From assembly GCF_003918875.1 (NCBI RefSeq), contig NW_025766002.1, positions 9,362,001-9,426,000 of the forward strand: a stretch of DNA of 64,000 nucleotides. Reading direction: 5' to 3'. Under the pieces are notes generated by a model. It was not told the DNA's origin. It did not search any database and saw only the letters and a list, made by a program, of their open reading frames with translations. The stretch's first letter is position 1. Every line of letters starts with the position of its first letter. Both the position numbers and the translations under genes were made by a program. The stretch comes from Haliotis rubra. Taxonomy: Eukaryota. Below are positions 9,426 to 49,970 of this stretch, one piece after another.

Positions 9426-9579
9426 TGTTTTCTTTAAAAAGATGTGATAGATTGGACTACCAGTATAAATATATGGCGAATCAATGTATAAGTGTCCCTA
9501 ACTATAATGACAGCCTTCTGATTAATGGAGTTTCGGCATCAGTCAGTGATCACATGATAATGATAAATAGACAAAATGG

Positions 9580-9773
9580 TAGACTAACAACTAGTCTCTG
9601 AAAGGAACATATTTTACTGAAAAAAGTTCATAGTAAAAAAAAATATAAAATAATGAAAAGGAGCCCTGAGACTTCTTCATTTTCAGAGCTGAGGAAATCT
9701 AGACTTGCCACATTTTCTAGACTTGCGTGGGCTTTCTTGGATATATTTGCTTCAGGGTCTGTACGACAGACTA
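9580..9773 (+). mobile_element. Academ-like hairpin-ended mini-element, copy A
   Basis: TAGACTA...CAGACTA ends; perfect 9-bp TSD acaaaatgg (9571-9579, 9774-9782); core TCTAGACTTGC present twice. Confidence 0.8.
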
Positions 9774-9815
9774 ACAAAATGGCTACTGTCAAACCCATTC
9801 ACTGTTCAATCATCG

Positions 9816-9890
9816 TGGGGGTAGTGGGTTAGCCTAATCACCCTGAAGACCTGGGGTCGATACCCTACATGGGTACAATGAACTCACTCA
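9816..9890 (+). mobile_element. SINE family 1, internally deleted
   Basis: head plus cacatgggtacaatg-like segment then ctcactca. Confidence 0.6.
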
Positions 9891-10528
9891 ATCTAGCCTA
9901 CGTCAACCTACGTCTACTTCAGAATGGAGGCCAATTTGTAAGAATAAAATGTTCCATGTCATGTGACTACCATAAACTGCAGTAGCAAGAGATCTGGCGT
10001 GTGGAATAAGGACTATTGAAGTGGTCATGGACAGATCAAAATATGTAATGTGTCCATGTGTGTCCTTGACATATCACCTTGGTAACATTTCCTCAACTTC
10101 ATTTTATTAACATAAGGTTAAATTATGAAAAGGCCAGATATCTGTCGAAGCTAAAATGTGTAAAAATCTTCTGTGCAACATCAACACAAGCAACGAACAC
10201 AAAGTATTTTTTTCAAATTTGGCTGGTGCTACCAGTGGGCAGCCTTTCTCCCATAACCTATTGGATAAAGTGTAGCCCAAGCCTAGAGTGATTTAGCAAC
10301 TCTACATTGCCTCAGCTCTAGGTGAAATTAGGGATTGTTCTGGGCTCAGTTTGGAATTTTGTTCATTATGAACACATCTGATAACTCGCCAAACAATTTC
10401 TAACATGTTTACTGTTTTGTAAAATTGGGCTGAGCCTGTATGACAGAAACGGCCACTATCATGCTTTGTCCTTGCCTTATTGTGCAGAAACAGTCCACCT
10501 GGGCCCTTTGAAGAATACCAATACCCTG

Positions 10529-10619
10529 GGCCCCCGTTCCTCAAAGCAATCATAGCGCTATGACTGTCGTAAGTCTATGTTAGAGTATGGTAGTTACGAT
10601 CGCTTTGAGGAACGGGACC
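10529..10619. mobile_element. PIF/Harbinger-type MITE
   Basis: Inverted repeats CCCGTTCCTCAAAGC / GCTTTGAGGAACGGG; CWG flanks (ctg/cag). Confidence 0.75.
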
Positions 10620-11442
10620 CAGGACTTTGATTTAGTAACTCTGTCTGGAACCATATCGCTCCAACGAAGGAAGCACACCGTTTAATTGGCTGTGGCCGTG
10701 GTATACTACTCATGTTTGCTTCGAGAGTGTCAATCTTCAGTTATGTTCCTCTACACCCTTGTAATTCCTCCTCCTCTCAGAATACTGTCACTTCTGTTGG
10801 TATCAGAGCCTTCAACTTCATCCTCCTCTGTAAAAGCAGCATCATTAACAGGTTGTGGCCATGTACCAACATCAACGCTGATGTACACAGTCGTAACTTA
10901 CAGCTCCACCTAGAATGTGTACTATATCAGGACACGCAAAACACGCTTTACATAATGTTGCTCCAGAGTCTGGGAAATAAATTATGTTGTGTCTGATGTG
11001 TTGATATGAAGAAAGTCGCACCTTAAATTGTCTTTCCCTTGCCAACTGTTGAAATCTCTAATCAGGAATGAAAATACACAGACATGGCTTAAAGAAGCCT
11101 TACATTCCAAGGATGAATTTAAATTTTTATTTGAAAAGACGTCTTTCAAAAGGTATCCGGTCCATCGTCATGGGAGATCCTTGGTCCTTGAGGATAGTTG
11201 CTGAATCTAGAAACAAATTACCTCGAGTTTGTAACAACTGGATAATGTCAGACACCTTGACTTAAAAAAATAATTCAACTCACACACTGTTAGGACTGGA
11301 CCTTAACACTGGACATTTATTGATGACTGCAATGGTCCATGGCATGAGAAATTCATTGATAACAATGTTCGTTTATGCTTGAAGTATGAGTATGAAACTA
11401 CTGGTCACATCTTCATCACACCTCCTACACTTCACTTTCATC

Positions 11443-14400
11443 CTACAGTGACATTCTACTCCGAGAACACCCCCTCCGACAGTGACACAATCCTCCCCAG
11501 AACACCACCTCCTACAGTGACACAATACTCCCAGAACACCCCCCTACAGTGACACAATACTCCCAGAACTCCCCTACAGTGACACAATCCTCCCAGAACA
11601 CCCCCTCCTACAGTGACAAAATACTCCCAGAACACCCCCCCTACAGTGACACAATCTTCCCCTAGAACACCCCCTCCTACAGTGACACAATCCTCCCCCA
11701 GAACACCACCTCCTACAGTGACACAATGCTCCCCCAGAACACCACCTCCTACAGTGACACAATCCTCCCCCCTTCCTAGAACACCCCCTCCTACAGTGAC
11801 ACAATCCTCCCCAGAACACCACCTCCTACAGTGACACAATCCTCCCAGAACACCTCCTCCTACAGTGACACAATACTCCCAGAACACCCCTCCTACAGTG
11901 ACACAAGTGCTCCTCCCAGAACACCCCCTACAGTGACACAATGCTCCCAGGTAACACCCTCCTACAGTGACACAATCCTCCCAGAACACCCCTCCTACAG
12001 TGACACAATCCTTCCTTCTACAGTGACACTGCTCCTCCCAGGTGTGACACAATACTCCCCCACTCCCCTCCTACAGTGACACAATCCCTCCCAGAACACC
12101 CCTCCTACAGTGACACAAACACCCCCTCCATAATGCTCCCAGAACACCACCCTCCTACAGTGACACAATACTCCCCAGAACACCTCCCTCCTACAGTGAC
12201 ACAATACTCCCCAGAACACACCCTCTCTACAGTGACACAATCTCCCCAGAACACCCTCCTCCTCCCTAGAACACAGTGACACAATGCTCCCAGAACACGC
12301 CCCTACAGTGACACAATACTCCCCAGAACACCCTCCTACAGTGACACAATGCTCCCAGAACACCCCTTCCTACATGACACAATCCTTCCTGAACACCCTC
12401 CTACAGTGACACAATCCTCCCCCAGAACACCCTCCTACAGTGACACAATCCTCCCTGGCACACCCCACTCCTCTTACAGTGACACAATCCTCCCAGAACA
12501 CCCCTCCTACAGTGACACAATCCTCCCAGAACACCCCTCCTACAGTGACACCCCTCCCACAGTGACCTGTCTCCATGCCTCCATTCTGGTGACTGTGCCT
12601 TGGTGGCTCCTCCTGGACTTGTGTTGGTGGCCACACTCCTTCTAGAGACACCCCTTCTACTGGTGTGCACTCCCCAGGGGCAGTGCTCCTGGTGCCTCCT
12701 ACAGTGACACTGTGCTCCTTCCAGATGTTTCTACACTCCTCCTACTGGTGACCCTCCTACAGAACTTGCCCCCAGAACAGCCCCGGTGTTGTGTCCCCAG
12801 GGCTTGGTGGTCTCCTACAGTGTCCTGGTGTCTCCCGGGTGGCATGTGTTCCCTCCTACAGTGACACACATCCACCCCTCCCAGGACACCCCTACAGGGC
12901 CCTGGTCTCCCCTAACACCCCTCCTACAGTGACACTTCCCTCCCGTTGGTCTCCCCAGACCACTGGTGGGCCCTCCCAGAGACCACAGTGACATGGTGCT
13001 GGGTCCAGAACACCCCTCCTACAGTGATCACAATGTCCCAGGAACACTACCCTGGCCTGGTCCACAATGTGCTCCTAGACCACACACGTGCCTGGTGTCT
13101 GTGTGGTTGACACCTGGGTCCTCCTACAGTGACCAATGTTCTTGCCTGAACACCCCCTTCCTACAGTGACACAATCCTCCCTGAACACCCCCTCCTACAG
13201 TGACACTTCTCCCCTCCACAGTGGTTCTCCCCCAGACCCACACACTCCTGGTGACTGTCTCCCTCCTGTTGTGACACAATCCTGGTTTCAGAACTACAGT
13301 GTGTCCCTTCTACAGTGTTCCTACATGGCCTCCCTCCTCCAGAACATCCCTCCTACAGTGACACTCCCTGGTGTGATTCCACAGTTGTCTCTGGGTCCTC
13401 ACAGTGACACTGTGCCCCAGGGTCCCACGGTGACCTCCTCTCTCACCACTGGTGGTGCTTGGGTCCCTCCTACAGTGTTGTGCTCCAGAACACCCCTCCT
13501 ACAGTGGTGACACAATCCTCCCCAGAACATCCTGGTCTGGTGTTCTCCTCTTACAGTTGGCAGTGACACAATGGTGGTTTGTCTCCTCCTGTGAACACCC
13601 CTGGGGCCTGCTACAGTGACACAATGCTCCTAGGGATACCTGCCTCCTACAGTGACACAATCCTCCCAGAACACCCTCCTACAGTGACACAATCCTCCCC
13701 AGAACACCCCTCCTACAGTGACACAATGGACAGCCCTCCTCCTGAACACCCTCCTACAGTGACACAATGCTCTTCCAGAACACCCTCCTACAGTGACACA
13801 ATGTTCCTAGAACACCCCCTTCCTACATGACACAATGTCCTCCTAGAACACCCTCTTCCTACAGTGACACAATGCTCCCAGAACACCCCTCCTACAGTGA
13901 CACAATCCTCCCAGAACACCCCCTACTACAGTGACACAATGCCTCCCAGACACACCCTCCTCCTACAGTGACACAATCCTCCCAGAACACCCCTCCTACA
14001 GTGACACAATCCTCCCAGAACACCCCCTCCTACAGTGACATAATGCTCCCCCAGACCACCCCTCCTACAGTGACACAATACTCCCAGAACACCCTCCTAC
14101 AGTGACACAATACTCCCAGAACACCCCTCCTACAGTGACACAATGCTCCCAGAACACCCTCTCCTACAGTGACACAATGCTCCCAGAACACCCCCTCCTA
14201 CAGTGACACAATACTCCCAGACACCCCCCCTACAGTGACATAATGCTCCCAGATCACCCCTCCTACAGTGGCACACTCCACCTAGAACACCCCTCCTACA
14301 GTGACACAATGCTCTCCCAGAACACCCCCTCCTACAGTGACACAATCCTCCCAGAACACCCCTCCTACAGTGACACAATACTCCCAGACACACACCCCCT

Positions 14401-15580
14401 ACAGTGACATAATGCTCCCCAGAACACCCCCCTCCTACAGTGACACAATGCTCCCCCAGAACACCCCCTCCTACAGTGACACAAGAACATGCCCCCTACA
14501 GTGACACAATCCCAGAACACCCCCTCCTACAGTGAAACAATACTCTTAGAACACATGCCCCTACAGTGACACAATGCCTCCCAGAACACCCTCCTACAGT
14601 GAAACAATACTCCCAGAACACCCCCTCCTACAGTGACACAATACTCCCAGAACACCCCTCCTACAGTGACACAATGCTCCCAGAACACGCCTCCTACAGT
14701 GACACAATGACACACAGTCACACAATCCTCAGAACATCCCCTCCTACAGTGACACAATGTTCCTAGAACACCCCTCCTACAGTGACACAATGCTCCCAGA
14801 ACACCCTCCTACAGTGACACAACACTCCCCAGATCCTCCCAGGACACAATGCTCCCAGAACACCCCTCCTACCTACATCCTCCCAGATGACACAATCCTC
14901 CTGAGGAACACCCCCTCCTACAGTGACACAATCCTCCCAGAACAACCCCTCCTACAGTGACACAATCCTCCAGAACACCCCCTCCTACAGTGACACAATG
15001 CTCCCCAGAACACCCCTCCTACAGTGACATGATGCTACAGTGACACCCCTCCCACAGGACACCCCCTCCTACAGTGACACAATGCTCCCAGAACACCCCC
15101 TCCTACAGTGACACAATACTCCCAGAACACCCCCTCCTACAGTGACACAATGCTCCCAGAACACCCCCTCCTACAGTGACACAATGCTCCCAGAACACCC
15201 CCTCCTACAGTGACACAATACTCCCAGAACACCCCTCCTACAGTGACACAATGCTCCCAGACACCCCCTACAGTGACATAATGCTCCCAGATCACACCTC
15301 CTACAGTGACACACTACACCCCTGAACACCCCCCTCCTACAGTGACACAATCCCCCAGAGACACCCCCTCCTACAGTGACACAATGCTCCCAGAACACCC
15401 CCTCCTACAGTGACACAATGCTCCCCAGAACACCCTCCTACAGTGACACACACTCCCAGACACACACCCCCCCTACAATGACATAATGCTCCCAGATTAC
15501 CCCCTCCTACAGTGACACAATACTCCCAGAACACCCCCTCCTACAGTGACACAATACCACCACAGCACTCCCTCCTACAG
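11443..15580. repeat. minisatellite, about 33-36 bp unit cctacagtgacacaatcctcccagaacacccct
   Basis: More than 100 tandem units with C-run length variation; degenerate middle part. Confidence 0.97.
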
Positions 15581-16269
15581 TTCAACAATACTCAAAACAC
15601 AGTCAACCCAAAAAGTATTGCAAACAACCACGATGGAAATGACGACTTCATTTTTCATCACTGTCTTTCTAATAGCCCACATATACCTTTGTCTCAATCA
15701 GATATGCTGTAAAGAAACAGTACACTAAGATGTAACTCTCTTCCCAAGTGTTTGCTGATCTTAACGAGAAAAACATAAAACAGTCTTAAAGCAGTCATCC
15801 AGGCTTCTTTGATAACCATGGACATATTTTCATAGAAGGAAGGTTCCCGAAAGCCAGCGTCTGGCAGTTGAGCAAGGCATGACTAGTGCACCATGTAGTG
15901 ATACACATCTGCATAAACCTACTTGTAGATCATGGATTTCAGAACTTCAAGAGTTGACCTACAGCCAAGACTTTTGGAGAATGTCGATGTTTTGTCTGCC
16001 ATGTATAAGGTGAATGAAAGATAACACAGAAATGTTTTTACCAGATAACTATTCTTTCAGCACAAGCCTGTGACTAAGTGGTATTTCTGTTTCTTGCCAT
16101 TCCTTATCATCCAACATGTTGGTCTGTGGCCATGTTTTTAAACACTATGTATTTATTTTGACACACATTTATGTGGGGTATATTGAGTTGTCAGTTCACG
16201 TTGACCTGATGTCTGTATTAGCTTGTCTTGGTGTGTGGGCCGGAAGACACTTACTGGATGGAAGGTGTG

Positions 16270-16467
16270 GATGAGCGAGTAAGTTTAGTTTTACGCCGCC
16301 CCCAGCAATATTGCAGCTGTAGGGCATCAGTCTGTAAATAATGGAACATGGACCAGACAATCCAGTGATCAGCAGCATGAGCATCGATCTACACAACTGG
16401 GATACAATGACATGTGTCAACCAGGTGAGCAAGCTGATCCCGTTAGTCGCCTCTCACGACAAGCATT
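16270..16467 (-). mobile_element. SINE-like family 2, 5'-truncated
   Basis: ggaccagacaatccagtgatc and ccgttagtcgcctctcacgacaagcat match the family reverse complement. Confidence 0.85.
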
Positions 16468-16553
16468 GGAAGGTGTGGACACTTATGCAAGTCCAACACA
16501 CCCAGCAGAGAAAACAGGTCCATATCTGATAAAAAAAGATGGGAAATGTAATG

Positions 16554-16905
16554 GGTGAGGTGAGGTGAAATGGGGTTTAACGTGGTGCTTAAGAATATTT
16601 CGCTCATATGACGACATGCATGCTCGTGTATGTGTGGCTGCTTGTACTAGCCCAGACTGAAGCTGGTTTTATAGTGCTAGCTCACTGAGATACCATACCA
16701 CAGTTAAGCATGAATACCCCACTCAGACACATTATACTGACTCCGAGCCGACCAGTCCTTGTTTTACCCATTAATGCTGAGCGCCAGGCAGGGCCAGCAA
16801 GAAGTGCCATATTTTAATGTATTTTAATATGACATGGCCAGGGATCGAACCGGAGACCTTCCTCTCTCTGGGCGGACGCTCTAACCACTACACAACGGAG
16901 GCGGT
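16554..16905 (-). mobile_element. SINE family 3, full length
   Basis: tRNA-like head on minus (GTGTAGTGGTTAGAGCG...GGTTCGATCCC); same body as 45-332. Confidence 0.88.
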
Positions 16906-16956
16906 TGGAAGGGGTAGATTTTTTCTTGAAGACAAATTATATATTTTTAATGCAAC

Positions 16957-17987
16957 GAAGTGACCTACGTAAACAGCATTGTGCAGAAGTTGAAGTGACC
17001 TACGTAAACGGCATTGTGCAGAAGCTGGAGTGACCTACGTAAACAGCATTGTGCAGAAGTTGAAGTGACCTACGTAAACGGCATTGTGCAGAAGTTGAAG
17101 TGACCTAGGTAAACAGCATTGTCCAGAAGTTGAAGTGACCTACGTAAACGGCATTGTGCAGAAGTTGAAGTGACCTACGTGAACGGCATTGTGCAGAAGT
17201 TGAAGTGACCTATGTAAACGGCATTGTGCAGAAGTTGAAGTGACCTATGTAAACGGCATTGTGCAGAAGTTGAAGTGACCTACGTAAACAGCATTGTGCA
17301 GAAGTTGAAGTGACCTACGTAAACAGCATTGTGCAGAAGTTGAAGTGACCTACGTAAACAGCATTGTGCAGAAGCTGAAGTGACCTACGTAAACAGCATT
17401 GTGCAGAGGTTGAAGTGACCTACGTGAACGGCATTTTGCAGAAGTTGAAGTGCCCTATGTAAACGGCATTGTGCAGAAGTTGAAGTGACCTACGTAAACA
17501 GCATTGTGCAGGAGCTGAAGTGACCTATGTAAACAGCATTGTGCAGAAGTTGAAGTGACCTACGTAAACAGCATTGTGCAGAAGTTGAAGTGACCTACGT
17601 AAACAGCATTGTGCAGAAGTTGAAGTGACCTACGTAAACGGCATTGTGCAGAAGTTGAAGTGACCTACGTAAACAGCATTGTGCAGAAGTTGAAGTGACC
17701 TACGTAAACGGCATTGTGCAGAAGTTGAAGTGACCTACGTAAACGGCATTGTGCAGAAGCTGAAAGTGACCTATGTAAACGGCATTGTGCAGAAGTTGAA
17801 GTGACCTATGTAAACGGCATTGTGCAGAAGTTGAAGTGACCTATGTAAACGGCATTGTGCAGAAGTTGAAGTGACATACGTAAACGGCATTGTGCAGAAG
17901 TTGAAGTGACCTACGTAAACGGCATTGTGCAGAAGCTGAAGTGACCTATGTAAACGGCATTGTGCAGAAGTTGAAGTGACCTATGTA
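16957..17987. repeat. 35-bp minisatellite gaagtgacctacgtaaacagcattgtgcagaagtt, about 29 copies
   Basis: Direct tandem periodicity. Confidence 0.97.
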
Positions 17988-18319: not shown

Positions 18320-19665
18320 TTGTAACTTAGACATGTGATATATCTTTTATTATTAACATAGACCAACTATATATACCTCACACTTGTAACTTAGACATGT
18401 GATATATCTTTTATTATTAACATAGACCAGCTATATATACCTCACACCTGTAACTTAGATATGTGATATATCTTTTATTATTAACATAGACCAACTATAT
18501 ACACCTCACACTTGTAACTTAGACATGTGATATATCTTTTATTATTAACATAGACCAACTATATATACCTCACACCTGTAACTTAGACATGTGATATATC
18601 TTTTATTATTAACATAGACCAACTATATACACCTCACACTTGTAACTTAGATATGTGATATATCTTTTATTATTAACATAGACCAACTATATACACCTCA
18701 CACTTGTAACTTAGATATGTGATATATCTTTTATTATTAACATAGACCAACTATATGTACCTCACACTTGTTACTTAGACATGTGATATATCTTTTATTA
18801 TTAACGTAGACCAACTATATATACCTCGCACTTGTAACTTAGACATGTGATATATCTTTTTTATTATTAACGTAGACCAACTATATATACCTCGCACTTG
18901 TAACTTAGACATGTGATATATCTTTTATTATTAACATAGACCAACTATATACACCTCAAACTTGTAACTTAGATATGTGATATATCTTTTATTATTAACA
19001 TAGACCAACTATATACACCTCACACTTGTAACTTAGATATGTGATATATCTTTTATTATTAACATAGACCAACTATATGTACCTCACACTTGTTACTTAG
19101 ACATGTGATATATCTTTTATTATTAACATAGACCAACTATATATACCTCCGCACTTGTAACTTAGACATGTGATATATCTTTTTTATTAACGTAGACCAA
19201 CTATATATACCTCGCACTTGTAACTTAGATATGTGATATATCTTTTATTATTAACATAGACCAACTATATATACCTCGCACTTGTAACTTAGACATGTGA
19301 TATATCTTTTATTATTAACATAGACCAACTATATACACCTCACACTTGTAACTTAGACATGTGATATATCTTTTATTATTAACATAGACCAACTATATAT
19401 ACCTCGCACTTGTAACTTAGACATGTGAGTGAATGAGTGACTTTAATTTTACGCCGCTTTTAGCAATATTCCAGCAATATTCCAGCAATATCACGGCAGG
19501 GAACACCAGAAATGGGCTTCACGCATTGTACCCATGTGAGGCATCGAACCCAGGTCTTCGGCGTGACAAGCGAATGCTTTCACCACTTGGCTACCCCACC
19601 ACCCCAACTTAGACATGTGATATATCTTTTATTAACATAGACCAACTACATATACCTCTCATTTT
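18320..19665. repeat. 64-bp AT-rich minisatellite (with SINE insertion)
   Basis: tgtaacttagacatgtgatatatc... recurs at 18321, 18385 and onward. Confidence 0.95.
19428..19605 (-). mobile_element. SINE family 1 inserted in the 64-bp array
   Basis: Family reverse complement flanked by aacttagacatgtga on both sides. Confidence 0.88.
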
Positions 19666-19712
19666 AACACAGACTTACAGCCTATACTTCTCATGGTTAA
19701 CAGAGCTATTTC

Positions 19713-19902
19713 TAGACTAAGTCTCTGAATATATAATTTTGATTGTAACAAACAAACCCATATAAATTGAAAAGGAGCCCCAGGGAGACCAGAAATCCGG
19801 AACCTGAGGAAATCTAGACTTGCTTTATTTAGGGCTTTAGCATTGCAGAGAAGGCTTGTCAGCAGGGGAAATAAGATGGTTCAGGGACTGTGAGACAGAC
19901 TA
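19713..19902 (+). mobile_element. Academ-like hairpin-ended mini-element, copy B
   Basis: TAGACTA...CAGACTA; 9-bp TSD agctatttc/agttatttc; TGAAAAGGAGCCC and CTGAGGAAATCTAGACTTGC shared with copies A and C. Confidence 0.8.
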
Positions 19903-20358
19903 AGTTATTTCTTTTACCGCTCATTGTTAACACAGACTTTACTGTATGTATTAGTCAAATCATGTATAATGAAGCTATGGCTGGAATGAACTAGAATTAG
20001 TGGTTCGTTTGAGTTTGTTATAACCAGAGTTTTATTGAACCTGTGCAATGATAATTCATTTTAATTCGATGGCACTGGCCATTTGATAACCTGGAGGGAT
20101 AAAGTGAGGGAAAAGTATTTGTTTTCAAGTATTTTCTGTTCAATGTTTTGAAATCCCAGCCTCAGCCCCTAACCAGAATATCAAAATGTCACGTCACTAA
20201 TGACCCACAGAACAAACTAACTGTATCTGAGTGGGGTACCCAATGTTACCTTGTGGTATAGTATACCAGTGGACTGGCACCAAAGTTCGGACATGCAGCA
20301 ACACAAAGTCATGTACATCACAACCAAAATTCAGCTCACCATTCTTGCTTCTTGAACA

Positions 20359-20550
20359 GCTGTCTCACAGCGCCTGAATTCCATTATTGTCCCTACTGAC
20401 CAACCCTCTGTCCAACGTTTAAGCCCTACATGAAGCAAGTCTAGATTTCCTCAGGTTCAGCATCTCCCATCTCACTGGGGCTCCTTTTCAATATTAAAGA
20501 AATTTGTGTCTACCAAAGTTATATATATTCAGAGACTAAGCATTAGTCTA
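20359..20550 (-). mobile_element. Academ-like hairpin-ended mini-element, copy C
   Basis: Reverse complement carries the same motifs; flanking duplication cttgaaca at 20351-20358 and 20551-20558; one terminus eroded. Confidence 0.78.
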
Positions 20551-20641
20551 CTTGAACATCTAACACTGGTATCACTAGTTGGTCTGGTGAAATTCTGTTA
20601 TCTTGATTATGTCACAGAAGAGCTTGAACATTGCTGTTTAC

Positions 20642-40707: not shown

Positions 40708-41430
40708 CACTACACCTTTAAGATACTACAGCTTAAGCACTGTACCTTTAAGATTTAAGATGCTACAGATCTGGCACCCAATTAAAGCTACTACAATGAA
40801 AGGCACTACACCTTTAAGATACTGCACCTTAGGCAATACACCTTTAAGATACTACAGCTAAATGCACTACACCTTTAGATACTACAATGAAAGGCAATAG
40901 ACCTTTAAGATACTACAGATGAAATGCACTTTTGGAAGGGTACTACAGCTCTTTAAGATACTACAGGAAAAGGCACCACACCTTTAAGGTACTACAGCTC
41001 AGGCACTCCAGTTAAGCTACTACAGTCACAGGCACTACACCTTTTAACATACTACACCTCAGGCACTGTACTTTTAAGATACTACAGATAAAGTCACACC
41101 TTTGAGCCTACAGCTCAGGCACTCCAGTTAATTGCTACTACAAAGCTCAAACATACAACACCTTTAAGATCCTACAACTCAGGCACCCCAAATTAAGTTA
41201 CAACGTATCTAACGCTAGACCTTTAAGATGTGGCAACTCTGACAGGACTCCTTCATGACACTTCTAACGCTATTCTTTTAAGATACCACACTTAACACAC
41301 GCTTTCACATGATACAACTCCTCACTGCACCTTTAAGATGGTACAGTTGAGACATGACAACTTTCTAAGGCACAACAACTCATACTTAATCTTTAAAAAG
41401 CTAGAAGTCAGACACTATCACTTTAAGAGC
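40708..41430. repeat. degenerate minisatellite of about 30 bp (cactacacctttaagatactacag)
   Basis: Recurring cctttaagat motif, decaying rightwards. Confidence 0.75.
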
Positions 41431-42079
41431 TTCATATTTTGACTCTAAGCTTCAAAGAAATTCTGTGTTGAGATTAATTCCTCGTGATCAATTCTCCTAC
41501 CACGCTTCGTAGCACGTAACTACCTTGTACTAAGATTTACCTGGGGTGTGAGTAGGCTGTGGCTCATATAAATGATGCATATTTGAGAAGACATAATTTT
41601 TCTTTTGCTTTAATCGACTTCCTAAGGTCTTGACACGCACCTTTATTATTGTGAACTAATAATCTTTACAACCGTGCATGTGAAATATCGCTTAAACTGG
41701 TTTTATGAGAGCTTATAGCCTTTTACACGGCTGATGGGTTCTGGAAATATCTCACAATAATAAACAGTGAAGCCTAAAAAATACGACCCTGATATAATAT
41801 TTCTTTCCCTTGAAACGCAGTATATGAATTACATGAATATTTACATATCAGTATCATTCAACATGTAGTTTGATAAGGACATGTTTAGAGCTGGCGTGAC
41901 ATTTTATAGATGCTTTGTTAGCTTTGATATATGACATTAAACATATTTGTTCTGGAGAATGCATTTAAATATGCTTGAGTATTTATACTACATTTTTAGC
42001 ATTCAGCAAAGTTATTTTACTTTAGTTGAAAATTTGAAACCAAAATATATTACTGCACCGGTATCTCATTTCTTAAAGA

Positions 42080-42185
42080 CTGATTGAGTTTAACTTTATG
42101 CCGCTTTTAACAATATTCCAACAATATCATGGCCGGGGACACCAGAAATGGGCTTCACACATACCCATGTGGGGAATTGAACCCA
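42080..42185 (-). mobile_element. SINE family 1, 5'-truncated
   Basis: gacaccagaaatgggcttcacac...ggggaattgaaccc. Confidence 0.8.
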
Positions 42186-42257
42186 CCACCCAACCTCACC
42201 ATCATTCAGAAATGGGTGGCTCCAGTGATATGGTGGTTCATGGTTTGTCAAGATATA

Positions 42258-43800
42258 CATAGATGGGTGCTTGATGGATGGATGGATGGATGGGTGCTTG
42301 ATAGATATGGATCATGAGGATATAGATGGATGGGTGCTTGGTGGATATGGATCATGAGGATACAGATGGATGGACAGACATACAGACATATTTATTTGTA
42401 TATGTGGCCCTGAGGCCAATAGTACATGTGTACAATAATAACAATGCATTTATGCGAACCTGTAAATACGCCGAAGTTATAGGAACATCAATAAATCCAT
42501 AAACACCCATTCACAATTTACATTTTTTCACTCAACATAAGTATGTGGTACAACACAAGGGCTACCTTAAACAACAAGTCAATATTTTCAGCGACGAAAG
42601 CATACAGAATTTTTGTCTCGACAGTTGGTTATAGAAAAAATAAGGCAAATATGTTTCTCTTTATTTCCAAATATTTCGGCATACAAGTAATACATGGTAC
42701 ACATCTTCTTGCGATAAATTGCAGAATGGACATTGATATCTGTTGCATTTGAAGTTTTAAGTAAATCGCTTTTGACTTTGAAATTGTAAGCTGCTTACAT
42801 CTAAATTTAGTAAGTTTACGCTTTAAGTTGTGGTGATTTAATCTTGAAAGGTAAATTTCTGTATTAATACAATATTTATATTCTGAATAAAAGTTGACAC
42901 AGGTTGATGACGTTATTTCATTATACCAGTCCTGTTGATAAATGTCTTTGCATCTCTGCTTGAATAATTTGATGAAATATTGTGTATTACTTACATTTTG
43001 AGCGAGCCATACATTTCCAAAGCCATGACTAAAAAGAATAGTTCTAACGAAGGAAACCCAATTAATATCTCCGGTATCATCTAGTGTTTTAAGCATTTCA
43101 TAACTACATCTTGAATATCGTGAAATTGGTTGTCTCATTGACATGGATCGTGAGGATACAGATGGATGGGTGCTTGATGGATATGAATCATGAGGATATA
43201 GATGGACGGGTGCTGATGGATATGGATAATGAGGATACAGATGGATGGGTGCTTGATGGATATGGATCATGAGGATATAGATGGATGGGTGCTTGATGGA
43301 TATGGATCATGAGGATATAGATGGATGGGTGCTTGATGGATATGGATCATGAGGATATAGATGGATGGGTGCTTGATGGACATGGATCATGAGGATACAG
43401 ATGGATGGATGGATGGGTGCTTGATGGATATGGATCATGAGGATATAGATGGATGGGTGCTTGATGGATATGGATCATGAGGATATAGATGGATGGGTGC
43501 TTGATGGATATGGATCATGAGGATATAGATGGATGGGTGCTTGATGGATATGGATCATGAGGATATAGATGGATGGGTGCTTGATGGATATGGATCATGA
43601 GGATATAGATGGATGGATGGATGGGTGCTTGATGGATATGGATCATGAGGATATAGATGGATGGGTGCTTGATGGATATGGATCATGAGGATATAGATGG
43701 ATGGGTGCTTGATGGATATGGATCATGAGGATACAGATGGATGGGTGCTTCATGGATATGGATCATGATGATACAGATGGATGGGTGCTTGATATAGATG
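42258..43800. repeat. 40-bp minisatellite ggatatggatcatgaggatatagatggatgggtgcttgat (interrupted by a LINE)
   Basis: Tandem periodicity at 42258-42370 and 43140-43800. Confidence 0.95.
42372..43139 (-). mobile_element. LINE 3' fragment (RTE-X-like ORF2 C-terminus), pseudogenised
   Basis: NWVSFVRTILFSHGFGNVWLAQ...FKQRCKDIYQQDW...EIYL...LTKFR; frameshifted EYHVLLVC motif; AATAAA plus short repeat tail. Confidence 0.78.
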
Positions 43801-44099
43801 CTGGATACGGATGGCTATAGATGATGGATGGATCCCAGATCATACAGGACAGAAGCCAGCTGATGACTGCAGACACTGGTGATGGACATGTGTGAGGAAT
43901 GCTTATTGATAAAAGATGAATGGTTGATACGGCAGATGATCAAGGAAATCAACAGAAGAAATATGACTGGAATGGTCAATTATGTACAAGTACATATAAA
44001 ATAAGTAGGTGACAATAAATTTAGAAGGTTGACTGTACACAGATAAGATGATTCTCAAATGATCTACACTTGCAAATTTTGTTGTACAAATATGAGGAT

Positions 44100-44365
44100 A
44101 GGTGAGATGAAATTGGGTTTAACATCGTACTTGAGAATATTTCGCTCATATGACGATGTGCATGTATGTGTATGTGTGGCTGCTTGTACTAGCCCAGACT
44201 TAAGCTGCTTTTATAGTGCTAGCTCACTAAGATACCATGCCGCAGTTAAGCATAAATACCCCCACACTGACGCTGTTTCCACCAGTCCTTCTTGGTACCC
44301 ATTTATAAGCACCAGGCAGGGCCAACAAGTACCATATTTTAACTTCTTTTGGTATTACACGGCTA
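44100..44365 (-). mobile_element. SINE family 3, truncated
   Basis: ttttatagtgctagctcact and gcagttaagcat; homologous to 16554-16905. Confidence 0.85.
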
Positions 44366-45309
44366 GGGTTTACAAACATGAAGAAACCACTGGTAGCATA
44401 TAGCAGTGAATCATATGGTCTAGGACAGATCATCTACACATACCGCAACATGACTAAGAATACATGACCAAGGATTGCCCAAACACAGAAATCTGTGTTG
44501 AAAATAATTAGGTTAATTTTGTTCATTTCATGCAATGGCAAGTGAACCAATTTCAACGATTTAAGAAATCTACTCCTTATTATATGCATATGACTCCCTG
44601 AAAGGCAGAGAGGGAGTCAAAATGACACCCATATTTGGAACATTAGGACAAGCCCTGAATGACACCAGCAGTCAAACAGACCGCTCTACACACATACTTG
44701 TAACATGACTAGGACTATATGACACGAGCAGTCAAACAGACTACACTACCCCTGTAAGGAGTACACCTGAGTACAGTTCACATCGACAGCACGAATTCTA
44801 ACACTTAAGAGGTGAACAGATAAGCTACTGCATACTTCCTTTCCGTGGTGAAGGAAGGGTATCCTCGAGGGGAGAAACTCTTTAATGTGGCCACAACACG
44901 CTGGCAGCATTAGCAGGGCAATAGGGTTGGGAGCACATCAGTGCTGATTTTGTAAATGATCTCCGAAATTATTTTCGCTGACTGTAATTTCAGGGAAGGG
45001 TGGCATGAGTGCCACACATGCTAGTCAAACACACACAGCTCAGCCATACAAACAAAATAATCAGTTTTTTTCATTGATGATTTTGATTTAGAATTGGTAG
45101 CCTCGAAGTTAGTTCATGCTGGATTTCATCACAGGCATGTCTCCTGCTTGGCAGACATTCTTGCCATGATGTACTGGGCTGAACATGCTGATGGAGTTTT
45201 AACCTGCCTCGTGATGCTGCTGGTATTATATGTGCAAAATTATCATCATAAAGTTGGTACTTTGTCACAAGCTTTGTAAAATTATTCATCCTTTTAGTCT
45301 TCTGCTGCT

Positions 45310-45950
45310 ATACTATTACATACTTTGAAGACAAAAGATTCCCCTTCTACTATGTTATAAAAGGTTTGAAAATCAAATGATTGTCTTTTTCTGTTCTATT
45401 ATATACTTTAAAGATAAAAAGATTCCCATTTCTTTCCTATTGTATGATTCCAAGATCCAAATGATTCTCTTTCTTTATTTTTACCCTCGAGTAAATGCTT
45501 CAAAGATATGACAGATTCTTCCATCTATTGTATTATATGCTTCAAAGATTCAATGATTCTCTCTCTCTGTTCTATTAAGCCAGAGTAAATGCTTCAAAGA
45601 TATGACAGATTCTCCCATCTATTGTATTATATGCTTCAAAGATTCAATGATTCTCTTCTGTTCTATTAAGCCAGAGTAAAAGCTTCAAAGATATGACCGA
45701 TTCTCCCATCTATTGTATTATATGCTTCAAAGATTTAAATGATTCTCTTCTATTCTATTACCCCAGAGTAAAAGCTTCAAAGATATGACAGATTCTTCTA
45801 TCTATTCTATTATATGCTTCAAGATTCAAATGATTTCTCTTCTATTCTATTAACCCAATGTAAATGCTTCAAAGATCCATGACAATCTGCCTTCTGTTCT
45901 ATTATATGCTACAGATACTACAGATTCTCCCATTTATTCTGTTATATGCT
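45310..45950. repeat. minisatellite of about 90 bp built from two related subunits (gcttcaaagat)
   Basis: Tandem periodicity. Confidence 0.85.
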
Positions 45951-46566
45951 TTAATGTTACTTAAAGATCCTCCTGATAAACTTGAGCTTATCTGTACAAC
46001 ATACAAGCTCATTGGAGTAATATCATTTTGATGGGTTTATAAACAAAGATGGTAATGTGAGGTGGATCTACATTCAAGTGTTAAGGCAATGATGGATATA
46101 TTTATTTTGTCAGAGTTTGATCTTGAAATTCACACAGACCTGCATGATCTGTTTAGTTTCCCAAAAGGAACTGAACCCCTCACAAATAGAGTCAAACAAG
46201 CCATGATTGTTCTAATTATTTATACAATTTATCACATTACTAAACAAGCTATATACAACAGCAGAGAACAAACTATTTATTATTTTACGATCGCATTGAA
46301 TTTCAAAAGTGTGTTTTGAAAACCAGGTCCAAATTTCTGGTTTACATTTTAACATCAACTACAGGGAATTAGGGTTTGATTTCACTAAGTCAACAAACAC
46401 TGAGAGAGCAGATTCTGGATTGTGTGACTCATGACTACTTCAGGCTATTGAAAATAAATATATCAAGCTTTCCAATGATATATAATGAAGTAAGCTGACA
46501 ACCAATGTGATCCTTGGGGTTCTAACTGCATCAGATCAAACATGGTTAGTGAATTATTTCAAAATC

Positions 46567-46707
46567 NNNNNNNNNNNNNNNNNNNNNNNNNNNNNNNNNN
46601 NNNNNNNNNNNNNNNNNNNNNNNNNNNNNNNNNNNNNNNNNNNNNNNNNNNNNNNNNNNNNNNNNNNNNNNNNNNNNNNNNNNNNNNNNNNNNNNNNNNN
46701 NNNNNNN
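46567..46707. other. assembly gap
   Basis: run of N. Confidence 1.
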
Positions 46708-46754
46708 TAGAAATATTATTTACCATTATTGCTCAGGAACTTAATAAATTTCCA

Positions 46755-47000
46755 TGGCAGTGGGATAGCCTAGTGGTTAAAGTGTTTGCTCGTCACACCA
46801 TTCATTCTAATCATTCTCTCACGGGTACAATATGTGAAGCCTATTTCTGGTGTCCCCCGCCATGATATTGTTGAATGTTGCTAAAAGCCGTGTAAAACCA
46901 CTCACTCACTAATAATTTTCCATCCACATGGGCACAATGTGTGAAGCCCATTTCTGGTGTCCCCATCTGTGACCCTGCCAGAATATGGCTTATAGATACA
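46755..47000 (+). mobile_element. SINE family 1 plus a second partial copy
   Basis: tagcctagtggttaaag head; ccacatgggcacaatgtgtgaagcccatttctgg recurs at 46924. Confidence 0.75.
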
Positions 47001-47654
47001 TAAATCCATTATTACACACTATGTATTTATTTTCCACAGGCACCATATAATACAAAATGTCAATCAAAGTGCATCAGTATCCAAGGTTCTGACAGCGATG
47101 TATTTAATGTCAACCTCAGAATCCAAAGCATTTCTTCAATGGTGATGTATTTACAAAGGTGTTACCAGTGTTTTTGTCCTGCAGGGGATATGTTTACACC
47201 TATCAATAGCAACACCAGCAGGTGTCGGTACCAACCAATTTAAAGCCACAAACACAATAAACACACTACACCTGATTGTATTTCCCCGTGGCCCCTGGCA
47301 TTAATTAGAAACATTTATAGGTTGAACTTCTATAAACGTGACATGTGCATGCTTAGTTGTACCAAATTTGTGTTATTTAGAAGTTAATTAATTTCACTGA
47401 CGGTCTTGTTAAAATCCAAATCTGATAACCAGTCTGAATTATTTTGTTGTTAGTGAGAGTGCAAGTATATTCACAAACTTTACACAGAAAAAAAAATTGT
47501 GTTGCTAGAAATTCTGATAAGCATCTGGAAAGATCTGTCAGTGGAACACAAAAACAGACCCAAAGCCAACTTTTTCTTTGTTGCAGTGCTTTTGTGTTGG
47601 CTGGGCTCTGAGGCATTATTGTACATGAAGGATTGAACAGACCTTTACATTTTT

Positions 47655-48003
47655 CTCATCACCATCAGCATCATTATCATCAGCATCATCATCATTGATA
47701 GCAATGAAGTAATGCCATGTCATTATTAACTAAAATTATCATCACCATCATCATCATCACCATCATCATCATTGATAGCAATGAAGTAATGCCATGTCAT
47801 TATTAACTAAAATTATCATCACCATCATCATCACCATCATCATCATTGATTGCAATGAAGTAATGCCATGTCATTATTAACTAAAATTATTATCATCAAT
47901 CGTCACCATCATCATCACAATACTGACGTCAACGAAGTAATACCATGTCATCATTAACTAAAAATCATCATAATCATCATCATCATCATCGTCATCATCA
48001 TCA
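47655..48003. repeat. repeat of about 70-75 bp with embedded (CAT)n
   Basis: gaagtaatgccatgtcattattaactaaaa occurs four times (last copy diverged). Confidence 0.88.
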
Positions 48004-48764
48004 TGAATACCAACATTATCATACATCTTCAACAAATATGTGGTGTTCCTGTAACTCAAATCAAATCAATGCCAACTAATTATGCCATTTCCCCGCCACA
48101 ACACGTCCAACTGAAGGAATCTCAGAAAGGAAATTTGCCGATGTGAATGAACGCCAAATTACAAGGAATTGCCGAGAAATCATAGGAACGCCACCCAGAC
48201 ACAACATAGTGGCCGCCAATCAATGAGGTAAATACATGGCGGAACGTGAGAGATTTGTAAAACTCAATCTGACTGCCACTGTTAACCCAAATTGGCTTAG
48301 TTACTTGGTAATTCTGTTAATTTTGTCCGATTTTTCACATATGATTGAGCTGAATAACATGGCAAATAGTCTTCATCGAAAAGTAAGCTGCTCAGGCTGA
48401 TGTAAATGAGTTGGTATATATTTAATGACATCTTTGCATCATGTTAATGATAAATCTCCAGTTCGACTGATGGGACACGAAGATAAATTGACAAGAATTC
48501 AATGGCTTTTGACAATTACTGTCCTTGGCAAGTACATGATGGACGTGTATTATATAGCTGCATTGCATTGCCACAGTATGAACAAACTGCTCATCAAACA
48601 CTCGTAACACAGAGAAGAACATACTTGGCTAAACTTGTGAGATGCTTATAATGTTTGAAATTAGAGTCATTAATGTTTTCTCTGTGGATGACTGTGTTGA
48701 TGCATGGGAAAAAAAAAATACAGTTTTAGCTATTTCATATATGCTTACTTCTACATCATAGGCC

Positions 48765-49208
48765 TGGCCAATATTATTACTTGTTTCACAGATTATGGGG
48801 AGTAGTATGGCCAAAATCAGTACCTGTCTCAGCAACCAACGTGGGTAATATATATGGCCAATATTACTACCTGTCTCAGCAATTACCGCGGGTAATATGG
48901 CCAATATTACTACCTGTCTCAGCAATTACCGCGGGTAATATGGCCAATATTACTACCTGTCTCAGCAATTACCGTGGGTAATATGGCCAATATTACTACC
49001 AGTCTCAGCAATACCATGGGTAATATGGCCAATATTACTACCTGTTTCAACACTAACATGGGTAATATGGCCAATATTACTACCAGTCCCAGCAATTAAC
49101 ATGGGTAATATGGCCAATATTACTACCTGTCTCAGCAATTAACATAGGTAATATGGCCAATATTACTACCTGTCTCAGCAATTAACATGGGTAATATGGC
49201 CAATATTA
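48765..49208. repeat. 43-bp minisatellite with two internal near-palindromes
   Basis: Unit atatggccaatattactacctgtctcagcaattaccgcgggta. Confidence 0.93.
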
Positions 49209-49631
49209 TCACTTACTTCACCTATCATTGTTTTTGAAAAAAAAATTCAGGGGTGTTGGGGTTGGGGGGCTTTGAAAAGTGTTTACTTGTAGTATGTCAG
49301 GAAAAACCTGTTTTTATACGAACATATTAAGTGACTAGTATGCCTGAAGTGAAGCGTTTCAATATGCTTTTATGCCACATACAGTTATACCAGAGTGGGT
49401 ACTTAAATTCAGTTGGAAAAGAGGTTCAAGATCAGCTATCCCATTTTCTTCATTCATCCAATATTTCTAGATATTTCCCTATCAGTTTACCAATATGCTC
49501 TTTACTTTCTCTACATTCTTGTGTTGCCAGGTGGTCTAGTAGTCCATGCAGTGGCTTCCAGGCATGCTGGTAAGAGGGTCCAATCCTGACTCGATTCGTG
49601 CTATTCTCAGTCAGTTCCTTTAGGCATTGGG

Positions 49632-49816
49632 TAGCCTTGCTCCAAGGCTGTACTAAATGCTAAACCCATTGGTGTATAGAAATTCTCTCCGTTAAAGAGG
49701 CAAGTCTAGATAAGCGGACAGTTCTAAGGACCCCAGTCCGTTAGAGGAATACTTATATTTTATAGAAATTATCATTTAAACTATTTACTATTACCTCAGA
49801 GACTTGTGCAAGTCTC
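49632..49816 (-). mobile_element. Academ-like hairpin-ended mini-element, divergent copy D
   Basis: Perfect 9-bp TSD ggcattggg (49623-49631, 49817-49825); terminal hairpins AGCCTTG-ctc-CAAGGCT and GAGACTT-gtgc-AAGTCTC; core GCAAGTCTAGA at 49700-49710. Confidence 0.75.
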
Positions 49817-49970
49817 GGCATTGGGGTAACCTAGTGGTTATATATGCCAATCATGCACAAGACCTGGTTTGAAGTCCCATCTGTGAACTATGTGTGAAGC
49901 CCATGTCCCACGTTAAGATATTGCTGGAATATTGCTAAAAGCAGCAATAAACCAAACTCTCACTTATTCA
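49817..49970 (+). mobile_element. SINE family 1 whose head was the target of copy D
   Basis: ggcattggggtaacctagtggtta head and gctggaatattgctaaaagc tail. Confidence 0.8.

What the first reader, a model, noticed from the sequence alone, without database searches (positions are those of the whole stretch)
9571..49825. Family of 185-194 bp hairpin-ended elements with 9-bp TSDs and an invariant internal motif inside a conserved fold
Seen: four copies (9580-9773 +, 19713-19902 +, 20359-20550 -, 49632-49816 -), each with its own flanking duplication (acaaaatgg; agctatttc/agttatttc; cttgaaca; ggcattggg). They lack long TIRs. One end is an AGACT..AGTCT hairpin followed by CTGA, and the other is a hairpin whose stem changes while pairing is kept (GTCTGT/ACAGAC, CTGT/ACAG, GCTGT/ACAGC, AGCCTTG/CAAGGCT; GAG loop in three copies). 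An AT-rich spacer leads to the invariant TCTAGACTTGC, 100-106 nt from the first end in B, C and D (118 in A), even though D shares little else. The motif sits between complementary arms (GGAGCCC/GGGCTT in A-C; TTCCTCT/GGAGAGAA in D), and G-T pairs favour the TAGAC-first strand. Established: TAG-type termini with 9-bp TSDs characterise the helicase-encoding AcademH lineage. Inference: non-autonomous Academ-like elements whose mobility depends on single-stranded DNA or RNA structure and a precisely spaced internal site, which may be an undescribed end-recognition system or an embedded ncRNA.
Basis: partly seen in the sequence, partly recalled or inferred. Interest (0 to 1): 0.75.

Follow-up and report, generated by a model that had tools for sequence, protein, structure and literature searches.

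The report
Abalone MITE families with palindromic ends
The four elements are real copies of three related, very abundant, non-coding cut-and-paste transposons of a mollusc (abalone-like) genome, with hairpin-capable ends and a conserved internal copy of the end sequence; this is an ordinary kind of element with an unusual end design, and its transposase is still unidentified.

Summary
The window holds four copies of three related MITE families: A (young), B/C and D. Genome-wide there are 10,892 intact 5' hairpins and 20,585 copies of TCTAGACTTGC, against about 400-500 for reversed-pattern controls. TSDs are 9 bp in about three quarters of 89 copies and 10 bp in a few. A related species has the exact empty site for copy A.

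Three points are new.
- The two "different" hairpins are homologous, imperfect ~23-bp inverted repeats (TAGNCT-palindrome-CTGAA). Stem positions change in a compensated way.
- The invariant internal motif is a third, half-site copy of the end. In family D it is identical to the 5' terminus.
- Insertion prefers a palindromic target that flanks the TSD (D-Y-A-S | N9 | S-W-R-H).

Not supported: a conserved fold around the motif, precise motif spacing, and an embedded ncRNA.

The Academ assignment cannot be decided. A 9/10-bp TSD fits both AcademH and Mutator-like elements. The genome has many intact MULE transposase loci and about eight RecQ-like repeat loci.

Verdict: a new member of a known kind, of moderate interest.

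The parts
9571..9579 (+). 5' copy of the 9-bp TSD (ACAAAATGG) of copy A
   Evidence: A contig of run X7 skips 9571-9773, which is this TSD plus the element.
9580..9773 (+). Copy A, family A MITE (consensus 196 bp). Young: the best copies are 96-97% identical to it.
   Evidence: 98% identical to the family consensus.
9581..9597 (+). 5' terminal palindrome of copy A (AGACTA-acaac-TAGTCT), followed by CTGAA
9698..9726 (+). Two copies of the internal motif TCTAGACTTGC, 18 bp apart. This duplication is typical of family A.
9757..9771 (+). 3' terminal palindrome of copy A (GTCTGT-acg-ACAGAC), followed by the terminal TA
9774..9782 (+). 3' copy of the TSD of copy A
19704..19712 (+). 5' TSD of copy B (AGCTATTTC)
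19713..19902 (+). Copy B, family B MITE (consensus 198 bp). This copy has a deletion inside the 5' hairpin. Its motif is at 19813-19823.
19903..19911 (+). 3' TSD of copy B (AGTTATTTC, 1 mismatch)
20359..20550 (-). Copy C, an older family-B copy (83% identical to the B consensus). The 3' terminal ACTA is lost. Its motif is at 20435-20445. TSD remnants lie at 20551-20559 and 20351-20358.
49632..49816 (-). Copy D, family D MITE (consensus 183 bp). Its motif is at 49700-49710. The first base is G here and T in the consensus.
49817..49825 (-). 5' TSD of copy D (CCCAATGCC on the element strand). The matching 3' TSD is at 49623-49631.

Best explanation
These are three sister families (A, B and D) of miniature, non-coding cut-and-paste DNA transposons (MITEs) of a mollusc genome. 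Other agents' notes call it abalone.

How they most likely move: a DDE-type transposase supplied in trans cuts the target with a 9-bp stagger, occasionally 10 bp. It prefers a palindromic site whose informative bases lie just outside the duplicated 9 bp, reading 5'-D-Y-A-S | N9 | S-W-R-H-3'. This means each target strand is cut right after YAG.

The two ends are homologous, imperfect inverted repeats: T, then a 6-7-bp-stem palindrome beginning AGNCT, then CTGAA. The palindrome is kept by compensated substitutions, so the ability of each end to pair with itself as a hairpin or cruciform is what is preserved, in addition to the TAGNCT and CTGAA letters.

The invariant internal TCTAGACTTGC is a third, direct-orientation half-copy of the end. 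It most likely serves as an extra sequence-specific transposase binding site.

Shown here: mobility, TSD length, target preference, end homology, compensation, and the motif's identity with the end. Inferred: protein binding at the motif, and hairpin or cruciform extrusion. Conservation acts on lineages that can still transpose. It does not act on inserted copies.
For: - TSD: 9 bp in 66 of 89 copies against 0.06% in the control; perfect 10 bp in 6.
- Empty site: a 984-nt contig of run X7 (another organism) joins window 9570 to 9774. It skips 203 nt, which is the 194-nt element plus one 9-nt TSD (table 8, record 28).
- Abundance: 2056 exact family-A 5' 24-mers against 0 for the control; 10,892 generic 5' hairpins against 495; 20,585 motifs against 390.
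- Target logo from 66 sites. Position -1 is A in 47; position -3 is never C; position 10 is C in 32; position 13 is C in 36 and G in 1.
- End homology: my search pattern for the 5' end also matched reverse-complemented 3' ends.
- Hairpins: 93.6% of cells pair against 21-43% when the partner columns are slid; 5 pairs change on both sides; 0 of 500 shuffles reach the covariation score. RNAalifold independently picks the same two hairpins.
- Six end hairpins (three families, two ends each): stem positions 4, 7 and 8 each show three pair types and are almost always paired.
- Motif equals end: D's 5' terminus TAGACTTGC is identical to the motif core, and the sequence after the motif aligns to the 5' end (p=0.0025).
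- Between families, the only long invariant interior block is ATCTAGACTTGC. D is about 51% identical to A or B elsewhere.
- Within families the motif decays like other interior 11-mers.
Against: - No autonomous partner was found, so action in trans by a DDE enzyme rests on TSD length and target pattern alone.
- The compensatory changes come from only about four independent hairpin lineages.
- A dimeric protein site or repair-driven homogenisation of the arms could also keep a palindrome.
- Binding of a protein to the internal motif is untested.
- The copies analysed are the best-scoring 30-40 per family and are therefore biased towards young, intact ones.
Confidence: 0.8

Rival explanations
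1. The elements are non-autonomous AcademH derivatives. The transposon's own RecQ-like helicase opens the terminal palindromes into hairpins, and the transposase recognises these together with the internal site.
For: - AcademH makes 9 or 10 bp TSDs (PMC10045372), and both lengths occur here.
- The genome holds about eight repeated loci with near-identical RecQ_Zn_bind scores. Three of them (C2452, C1274, C502) have a Helicase_C hit beside them.
- Palindromic ends kept by compensation would suit a helicase-assisted mechanism.
Against: - No hairpin end listed or 65 lies on a contig position near any RecQ-like locus.
- The open frames at the RecQ-like hits are short, 87-222 aa.
- AcademH termini could not be checked because the paper is not held.
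- TSD length does not separate AcademH from MULE.
Confidence: 0.3
2. The elements are mobilised by a Mutator-like (MULE) transposase. The internal motif is then comparable to the extra internal TIR copies described in plant MULEs.
For: - MULEs make 9-11 bp TSDs (PMC3310237).
- MULE transposase domains are very abundant here: 675 first-look candidates, all 150 scored ones significant. Many have 300-497-aa open frames without stops, and runs of identical scores suggest young families. That fits a family-A burst only 1.8% diverged from its consensus.
- Plant MULEs with additional TIR copies are documented (PMC3310237).
Against: - Eleven MULE loci lie on contigs covered by the list of family-A 5' ends (C1 to C90). 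None has such an end within 5 kb in the right orientation.
- The TIRs here are about 23 bp. PMC3310237 gives 100-500 bp for plant MULE TIRs; how long animal MULE TIRs are was not checked here.
- No MULE terminus sequence could be read.
Confidence: 0.4
3. The 190-bp element is a head-to-tail dimer of two ~95-bp units. On this reading the internal CTAGACTTGC is the old junction: a 3' end CTA overlapping a 5' end TAGACTTGC by TA.
For: - CTA plus (TA)GACTTGC reads exactly CTAGACTTGC.
- In D, the sequence after the motif aligns with the 5' end (p=0.0025).
- A TTCAG word lies upstream of the motif in A and B, and also upstream of the 3' hairpin.
Against: - The 28 nt before the motif do not align with the 3' end better than shuffles (p=0.22-0.95).
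- No palindrome is left at the internal site.
- No ~90-bp monomer family was seen in 341 kb.
Confidence: 0.12
4. The element carries a structured non-coding RNA, or a host-selected regulatory site, centred on the invariant motif.
For: - The motif is invariant across families that share little else.
- In A and B the arms GGAGCCC and GGGCTTT can pair, with G-T pairs on one strand only.
Against: - No Rfam family reaches its threshold in the window.
- RNAalifold finds no shared central helix.
- Fold energies are within about 2 sd of shuffles on both strands.
- Inserted copies lose the motif at the same rate as other interior 11-mers.
- D's consensus does not keep the proposed arms.
Confidence: 0.04
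5. The hairpin ends mark a single-strand or rolling-circle element of the Helitron/Helentron or IS200/IS605 kind.
For: - Both ends can form hairpins.
- Helentron-type elements with end hairpins are abundant in this genome according to other agents' notes.
Against: Those classes leave no TSD (from established knowledge of these families; not checked in a paper here). Here a 9/10-bp TSD flanks most copies, and the empty site retains exactly one TSD copy.
Confidence: 0.02

Closest known systems
MITEs (miniature inverted-repeat transposable elements) of class II transposons
   Same: Short (183-198 bp) and non-coding. They have thousands of copies, a fixed-length TSD, terminal inverted repeats, and presence/absence differences between species.
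   Different: Each TIR is itself a palindrome kept by compensated changes. An invariant internal half-copy of the end is shared by families that otherwise differ. The target preference lies outside the TSD.
AcademH lineage of Academ transposons (Kojima 2020, as cited in PMC10045372)
   Same: TSDs of 9 or 10 bp, both seen here. RecQ-like helicase repeats exist in this genome.
   Different: No Academ transposase or helicase was found between such ends. The terminal sequences of AcademH could not be compared.
Mutator-like elements (MULEs), including plant MULEs with additional internal TIRs (PMC3310237)
   Same: TSDs of 9-11 bp. An extra internal copy of the terminal repeat. MULE transposases are abundant and apparently intact in this genome.
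   Different: The TIRs here are about 23 bp, not hundreds. No MULE with these ends was found.
Transposons with internal or subterminal transposase binding sites (for example the IR/DR ends of Sleeping Beauty/Tc3, or subterminal repeats of Ac and En/Spm; from general knowledge)
   Same: A sequence related to the very end recurs inside the element, in a position where a transposase could bind.
   Different: Here there is a single site in the middle of a 190-bp element. It is better conserved than the ends themselves, and binding is untested.
MITE-born satellites of molluscs (pearl/CvA-type elements of bivalves; from general knowledge)
   Same: Parts of these MITEs are amplified into 54-bp tandem arrays (L091; C1:725397-726013).
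   Different: In L091 the repeat unit spans the insertion junction: flank, TSD and 5' hairpin. It is not an interior core.

Membership tests
MITE / non-autonomous class II transposon | Short, with no coding capacity | tested here: met
   Consensuses are 183, 196 and 198 bp. That is too short to encode a transposase.
MITE / non-autonomous class II transposon | Fixed-length target site duplication | tested here: met
   9 bp in 66 of 89 copies against 0.06% in the control; perfect 10 bp in 6.
MITE / non-autonomous class II transposon | Terminal inverted repeats | tested here: met
   The 5' end and the reverse-complemented 3' end share TAGNCT...AGTCNCTGAA, with 15 of 23 matches in B.
MITE / non-autonomous class II transposon | Insertion polymorphism with a precise empty site | tested here: met
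   A contig of run X7 skips window 9571-9773, which is the element plus one TSD.
MITE / non-autonomous class II transposon | An autonomous partner with matching ends | tested here: inconclusive
   Patterns that select against the MITE interior found no multi-copy long element. Candidate loci could not be fetched.
AcademH | 9 or 10 bp TSD | tested here: met
   the literature value is from PMC10045372.
AcademH | Autonomous copies encoding an Academ transposase and a helicase between the same termini | tested here: inconclusive
   RecQ_Zn_bind and Helicase_C repeat loci exist. None lies near a listed hairpin end, and their DNA could not be read.
   Kojima 2020 (PMC7165386) is not held, and no Repbase copy is available.
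Mutator-like elements (MULE) | 9-11 bp TSD | tested here: met
   PMC3310237.
Mutator-like elements (MULE) | Long TIRs (100-500 bp in plant MULEs) | tested here: not met
   The TIR is about 23 bp. PMC3310237 gives the 100-500 bp figure for plant MULEs; whether it holds for animal MULEs was not checked.
Mutator-like elements (MULE) | A MULE transposase gene between the same termini | tested here: inconclusive
   There are at least 675 candidate MULE loci. None of the 11 on contigs C1 to C90 is flanked by a family-A 5' end.
hAT | 8-bp TSD | tested here: not met
   Only 1 of 89 copies has a perfect 8-bp TSD. The termini TAGAC partly resemble hAT's YARNG; the 8-bp TSD and YARNG consensus are from established knowledge, not checked in a paper here.
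Helitron/Helentron or IS200/IS605-type hairpin elements | No TSD; insertion without duplication | tested here: not met
   A 9/10-bp TSD and an empty site with one TSD copy.
Known structured RNA family (Rfam) | A match at the family's gathering score | tested here: not met
   0 matches in the window.

The most novel reading that the evidence does not exclude
The palindromic ends plus the invariant internal half-site form a structure-dependent end-recognition system. A helicase-encoding (AcademH) transposon would extrude the terminal hairpins with its own RecQ-like helicase, and its transposase would dock on TCTAGACTTGC. This would be the first definition of cis-acting sites for the Academ superfamily, and would give a function to its helicase.
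Probability: 0.12. Interest if true: 0.7.

Novelty: new member of a known kind. Interest (0 to 1): 0.35.

Why it matters
These families contribute more than 10,000 insertions to a 1.38-Gb mollusc genome. One family is young: its best copies differ from the consensus by about 2%. It is also shared by several related organisms' sequencing runs. The families are therefore useful markers and a likely source of recent structural variation and of 54-bp satellites.

The end design gives three cis-elements that can be tested directly in a transposition assay: palindromes kept by compensation, an internal end-like site conserved better than the ends, and a target preference outside the TSD. If the partner proves to be AcademH, the elements would offer a handle on a superfamily whose mechanism and helicase function are, to my knowledge, unknown. 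If it is a MULE, they are an ordinary though neat MITE group.

Tried and rejected
1. Search for the autonomous partner using patterns that keep a family-A end and forbid the MITE's own interior bases, plus a generic hairpin version.
   - The hits were MITEs with indels, single unrelated sequences, a 54-bp tandem array (L091), and a low-copy group of ends followed by CTGAACATG.
   - No recurring long element appeared, and nothing lay near the helicase or MULE loci.
   - Each pattern would detect only about a third of true partners. It would miss any partner that shares more than about 40 bp with the MITE at each end.
2. Fetching candidate loci. The AcademH-like and MULE loci could therefore only be compared by coordinates.
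3. Reading Kojima 2020 for AcademH termini. The paper is not held. Other papers gave only TSD lengths.
4. Earlier-findings searches by sequence and by the words TAGACT and Mutator returned nothing.
5. Head-to-tail dimer idea. The pre-motif segment does not resemble the 3' end.
6. Global RNA or DNA fold. It is not more stable than shuffles. Two earlier runs of that script only timed out.
7. ORFs in the 341 kb in hand. None looked like a transposase by eye, and no Pfam scan was run.
8. Expression. No listed run holding the stretch is on record as RNA. Reads were laid on the empty-site test, so transcription is untested.


Full report
**What is in the window.**
- Reading the four places shows four short elements. 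Each starts TAGACT (GAGACT in copy D), ends CTA, and has a flanking direct repeat.
- Copy C has lost the last four bases and keeps 8 of 9 TSD bases.
- BLAST of the family consensuses against the window finds these four copies and no others.
- The window's N runs are at 3129-3313, 6838-6966 and 46567-46707. The last lies between copies C and D, 2.9 kb from D. No part of the finding touches it, and I did not try to fill it.

**They are three high-copy families.**
- The window is G000:C1112:9362001-9426000 in a 1.38-Gb genome of 2855 contigs.
- Searching that genome gave 3060 first-look candidates for copy B, 2157 for D and 1161 for A. The best 40 of each were nearly all full length.
- The best copies are 96-97% identical to window copy A, about 91% to B and 85-91% to D.
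- Alignments of 30 loci per family show sharp boundaries where unrelated flanks begin.
- Majority consensuses are 196 bp (A), 198 bp (B) and 183 bp (D).
- Whole-genome exact counts:

| Pattern | Hits | Reversed-pattern control |
|---|---|---|
| Family-A 5' 24-mer | 2056 | 0 |
| TAGACT-N2-9-AGTCTCT | 10,892 | 495 |
| TCTAGACTTGC | 20,585 | 390 |

- A second contig, C2107, holds 100% identical copies of all three window loci. It is probably an uncollapsed haplotype, and I excluded it from all counts.

**TSD and mobility.**
- I set element ends from BLAST and the family consensus without using the TSD. Of 89 copies, 66 have a 9-bp direct repeat with at most one mismatch, and 50 are perfect. Random pairing of flanks gives 0.06%.
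- Six copies have a perfect 10-bp TSD and one has 8 bp.
- I laid Logan contigs of four runs on window 8800-10600. A 984-nt contig of run X7 (a different, coded organism, roughly 90% identical in the flanks) is continuous from window 9570 to 9774. It lacks exactly 203 nt, which is the 194-nt element plus one copy of ACAAAATGG (table 8, record 28). This is a precise empty site.
- Contigs of run X1 cross both junctions of the filled site.
- Runs of at least four other coded organisms hold about a fifth of the sampled words of a 1001-nt stretch in which the element makes up 19%. Depth over the element is high in all four runs laid. Family A is therefore shared among related organisms.
- One holder is labelled a mollusc metagenome. 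Other agents' notes call this genome abalone. I did not verify the species myself.

**Target preference.** I rebuilt 66 pre-insertion sites. The nine duplicated bases carry little information. The four bases on each side do.

| Position relative to the TSD | Base counts (of 66) |
|---|---|
| -3 | never C (G 33) |
| -2 | C 27 / T 28 |
| -1 | A 47 |
| 0 | G 27 / C 19 |
| 10 | C 32 |
| 11 | T 35 / A 26 |
| 12 | A 30 / G 28 |
| 13 | C 36 (G 1) |

The two sides are reverse complements of each other. The target is therefore a 17-bp palindrome-like site, D-Y-A-S | N9 | S-W-R-H, and each strand is cut just after YAG. This is the kind of pattern a dimeric DDE transposase leaves. It resembles the element's own TAG...CTA ends.

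**The ends.**
In fact my search pattern for the 5' end also matched the reverse complement of the 3' ends.
- In B the 5' end TAGACTAATGCTTAGTCTCTGAA and the reverse-complemented 3' end TAGTCTGTCTCACAGTCCCTGAA agree at 15 of 23 positions.
- All six ends (three families, two ends each) read T, then a palindrome beginning AGNCT with a 6-7-bp stem and a 2-5-nt loop, then CTGAA. D has CTAAG at its 5' end.
- Stem positions 2, 3, 5 and 6 hardly vary (position 2 is unpaired, A opposite C, at the A and B 3' ends). Positions 4, 7 and 8 vary as follows:
  - Position 4: A-T, T-A or C-G. The B 3' end is the one exception, with T opposite T.
  - Position 7: A-T, G-C or T-A.
  - Position 8: A-T, T-A or G-C.
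- On a 14-sequence alignment, 93.6% of cells form standard pairs against 21-43% when the partner columns are slid by 1-3. Five of 14 pairs show changes on both sides. No shuffle out of 500 reaches the observed covariation score.
- RNAalifold, given no hint, predicts exactly these two helices and nothing else.
- These sequences represent only about four independent hairpin lineages. The statistics therefore overstate the number of events; I count at least six compensated double changes.
- Because the inner stem pairs next to the loop co-vary while their letters change freely, I favour selection for self-pairing (hairpin or cruciform) over a purely sequence-read palindromic protein site. This is inference.

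**The internal motif.**
- Between families the only long invariant interior block is ATCTAGACTTGC. Elsewhere D is about 51% identical to A or B in a global alignment.
- The core TAGACTTGC is identical to the first nine bases of family D.
- In D the 28 nt starting at the motif align with the 5' terminal 28 nt better than 99.75% of shuffles. The second hairpin arm is missing from the internal copy.
- All ends and the motif fit TAGNCTNNC.
- The motif is therefore a third, direct-orientation half-copy of the end. A and B kept this older form inside while their true 5' ends changed to TAGACTAA.
- I read it as an additional transposase binding site. This follows the logic of internal or subterminal binding sites in other transposons and of plant MULEs with extra TIRs (PMC3310237). 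It is untested.
- Spacing is only loosely kept. The motif starts at 105 (D), 109 (B) and 121 and 139 (A, which has an 18-bp duplication), and ranges from 98 to 111 among D copies. Distance to the 3' end varies from 47 to 79 nt.

**No conserved fold, no sign of an RNA.**
- Rfam finds nothing in the window at gathering thresholds.
- Minimum free energies of the three consensuses, on both strands and with RNA and DNA parameters, lie 0.3 to 2.2 sd below dinucleotide shuffles.
- The arms GGAGCCC and GGGCTTT do pair in predictions for A and B. They are identical in both families, so they say nothing about selection.
- In D the proposed arm GGAGAGAA is specific to the window copy; the consensus reads GGATAGAA.
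- Within families, copies lose the motif about as fast as other interior 11-mers. The fraction of interior windows at least as conserved is 0.50 (A), 0.27 (B) and 0.08 (D).
- This pattern fits selection on lineages that can still transpose. It does not fit selection on inserted copies by the host. That sample is small and biased towards intact copies.

**Which transposase?**
- AcademH makes 9 or 10 bp TSDs (PMC10045372), and MULEs make 9-11 bp (PMC3310237). Both fit.
- The genome has at least 675 candidate MULE-domain loci. All 150 scored are significant. Many have 300-497-aa open frames and runs of identical scores, which suggests young families.
- It also has about eight loci with near-identical RecQ_Zn_bind scores. 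Three of them (C2452, C1274, C502) have a Helicase_C hit beside them. There are also two long helicase ORFs on C3.
- I tried to find long elements with family-A or generic hairpin ends using patterns that forbid the MITE's own interior. No recurring long element appeared. No listed end lies near a helicase or MULE locus.
- None of the 11 MULE loci on contigs C1 to C90 is flanked by a family-A 5' end.
- These tests are weak. Sensitivity is about one third per copy, and they are blind to partners sharing more than 40 bp at each end.
- My odds: MULE 0.4, AcademH 0.3, something else or lost 0.3.

**Verdict.**
- The elements are MITEs of a known general kind. I found no paper describing them in abalone, on the strength of one search.
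- The interesting parts are the palindromic TIRs kept by compensation, the invariant end-like internal site, and the target preference outside the TSD.
- The conserved-fold, precise-spacing and ncRNA ideas fail.
- The Academ label is unproven.

Noticed in passing
L091:9007-10000 (G000:C2455, about 117,000-118,000): A 54-bp tandem array of at least 17 units that runs off the locus. Each unit is 29 nt of 5' flank, including the 9-bp TSD GTCGAAACA, plus the first 25 nt (hairpin + CTGAAAT) of a family-A copy. It is followed by the rest of that copy and the second TSD. This is a satellite born across an insertion junction.
   Followed up: partly
G000:C1:725397-726013 and C1:28772-29264 (not fetched): The motif TCTAGACTTGC recurs at 54-bp spacing (12 times) and at alternating 53/72/89-90-bp spacings. 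The MITE interior is therefore also amplified into satellites. Other agents noted 53-bp MITE-born satellites in this genome.
   Followed up: no
window:9245-9429: A tRNA-derived SINE (GGGGTGGTGGGGTAGCC...GGGTTCGATTCC..., tail of ACTC repeats) flanked by TTCTTTAA. It is precisely absent from a contig of run X4 (another organism) but present in run X7. This is a second presence/absence difference 150 bp from copy A.
   Followed up: partly
G000:C2107:572557-612360: A second contig carries 100% identical copies of window copies A, B and D at nearly the same spacing. It is most likely an uncollapsed haplotype or assembly duplicate of this region.
   Followed up: no
window:11441-15593, 16957-17987, 18320-19428 and others: The window is packed with minisatellites: a C-rich 33-34-bp array over about 4 kb, a 35-bp array, a 64-bp array and many more. 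From the flanks, copy B appears to sit in degenerate units just past the 64-bp array.
   Followed up: no
G000, many contigs (for example C2277:750142, C2736:254882, C1224:2358763): MULE transposase domains are very abundant: 675 first-look candidates, and all 150 scored are significant. Many have long open frames and identical scores, which suggests recently active Mutator-like families.
   Followed up: no
G000:C296:68816, C1112:5020384, C2452:113131, C2336:368432, C1274:10194, C1447:1069915, C2273:198489, C502:982023; also C3:915955 and C3:1166477: About eight loci have near-identical RecQ zinc-binding-domain scores, three of them with a Helicase_C hit beside them. Two ORFs of 1238 and 1378 aa carry Helicase_C. 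These are candidate transposon-borne helicases.
   Followed up: no
G000:C2078:6213867, C2524:356415, C2135:1009784, C2167:2874260, C358:591707, C224:4542218, C113:522983: A low-copy group of 5' hairpin ends with B-like loops is followed by CTGAACATG instead of any of the three MITE interiors. It is either an unexamined small family or a possible longer element.
   Followed up: no
G000:C469:839974, C1669:1083725, C2232:264472, C2232:498129, C2468:175099, C2507:135536: Variants of the family-B 3' end in which two changes (T4 to A, C18 to T) turn the mismatched stem into a perfect 7-bp palindrome, TAGACTGT-ctc-ACAGTCT.
   Followed up: no
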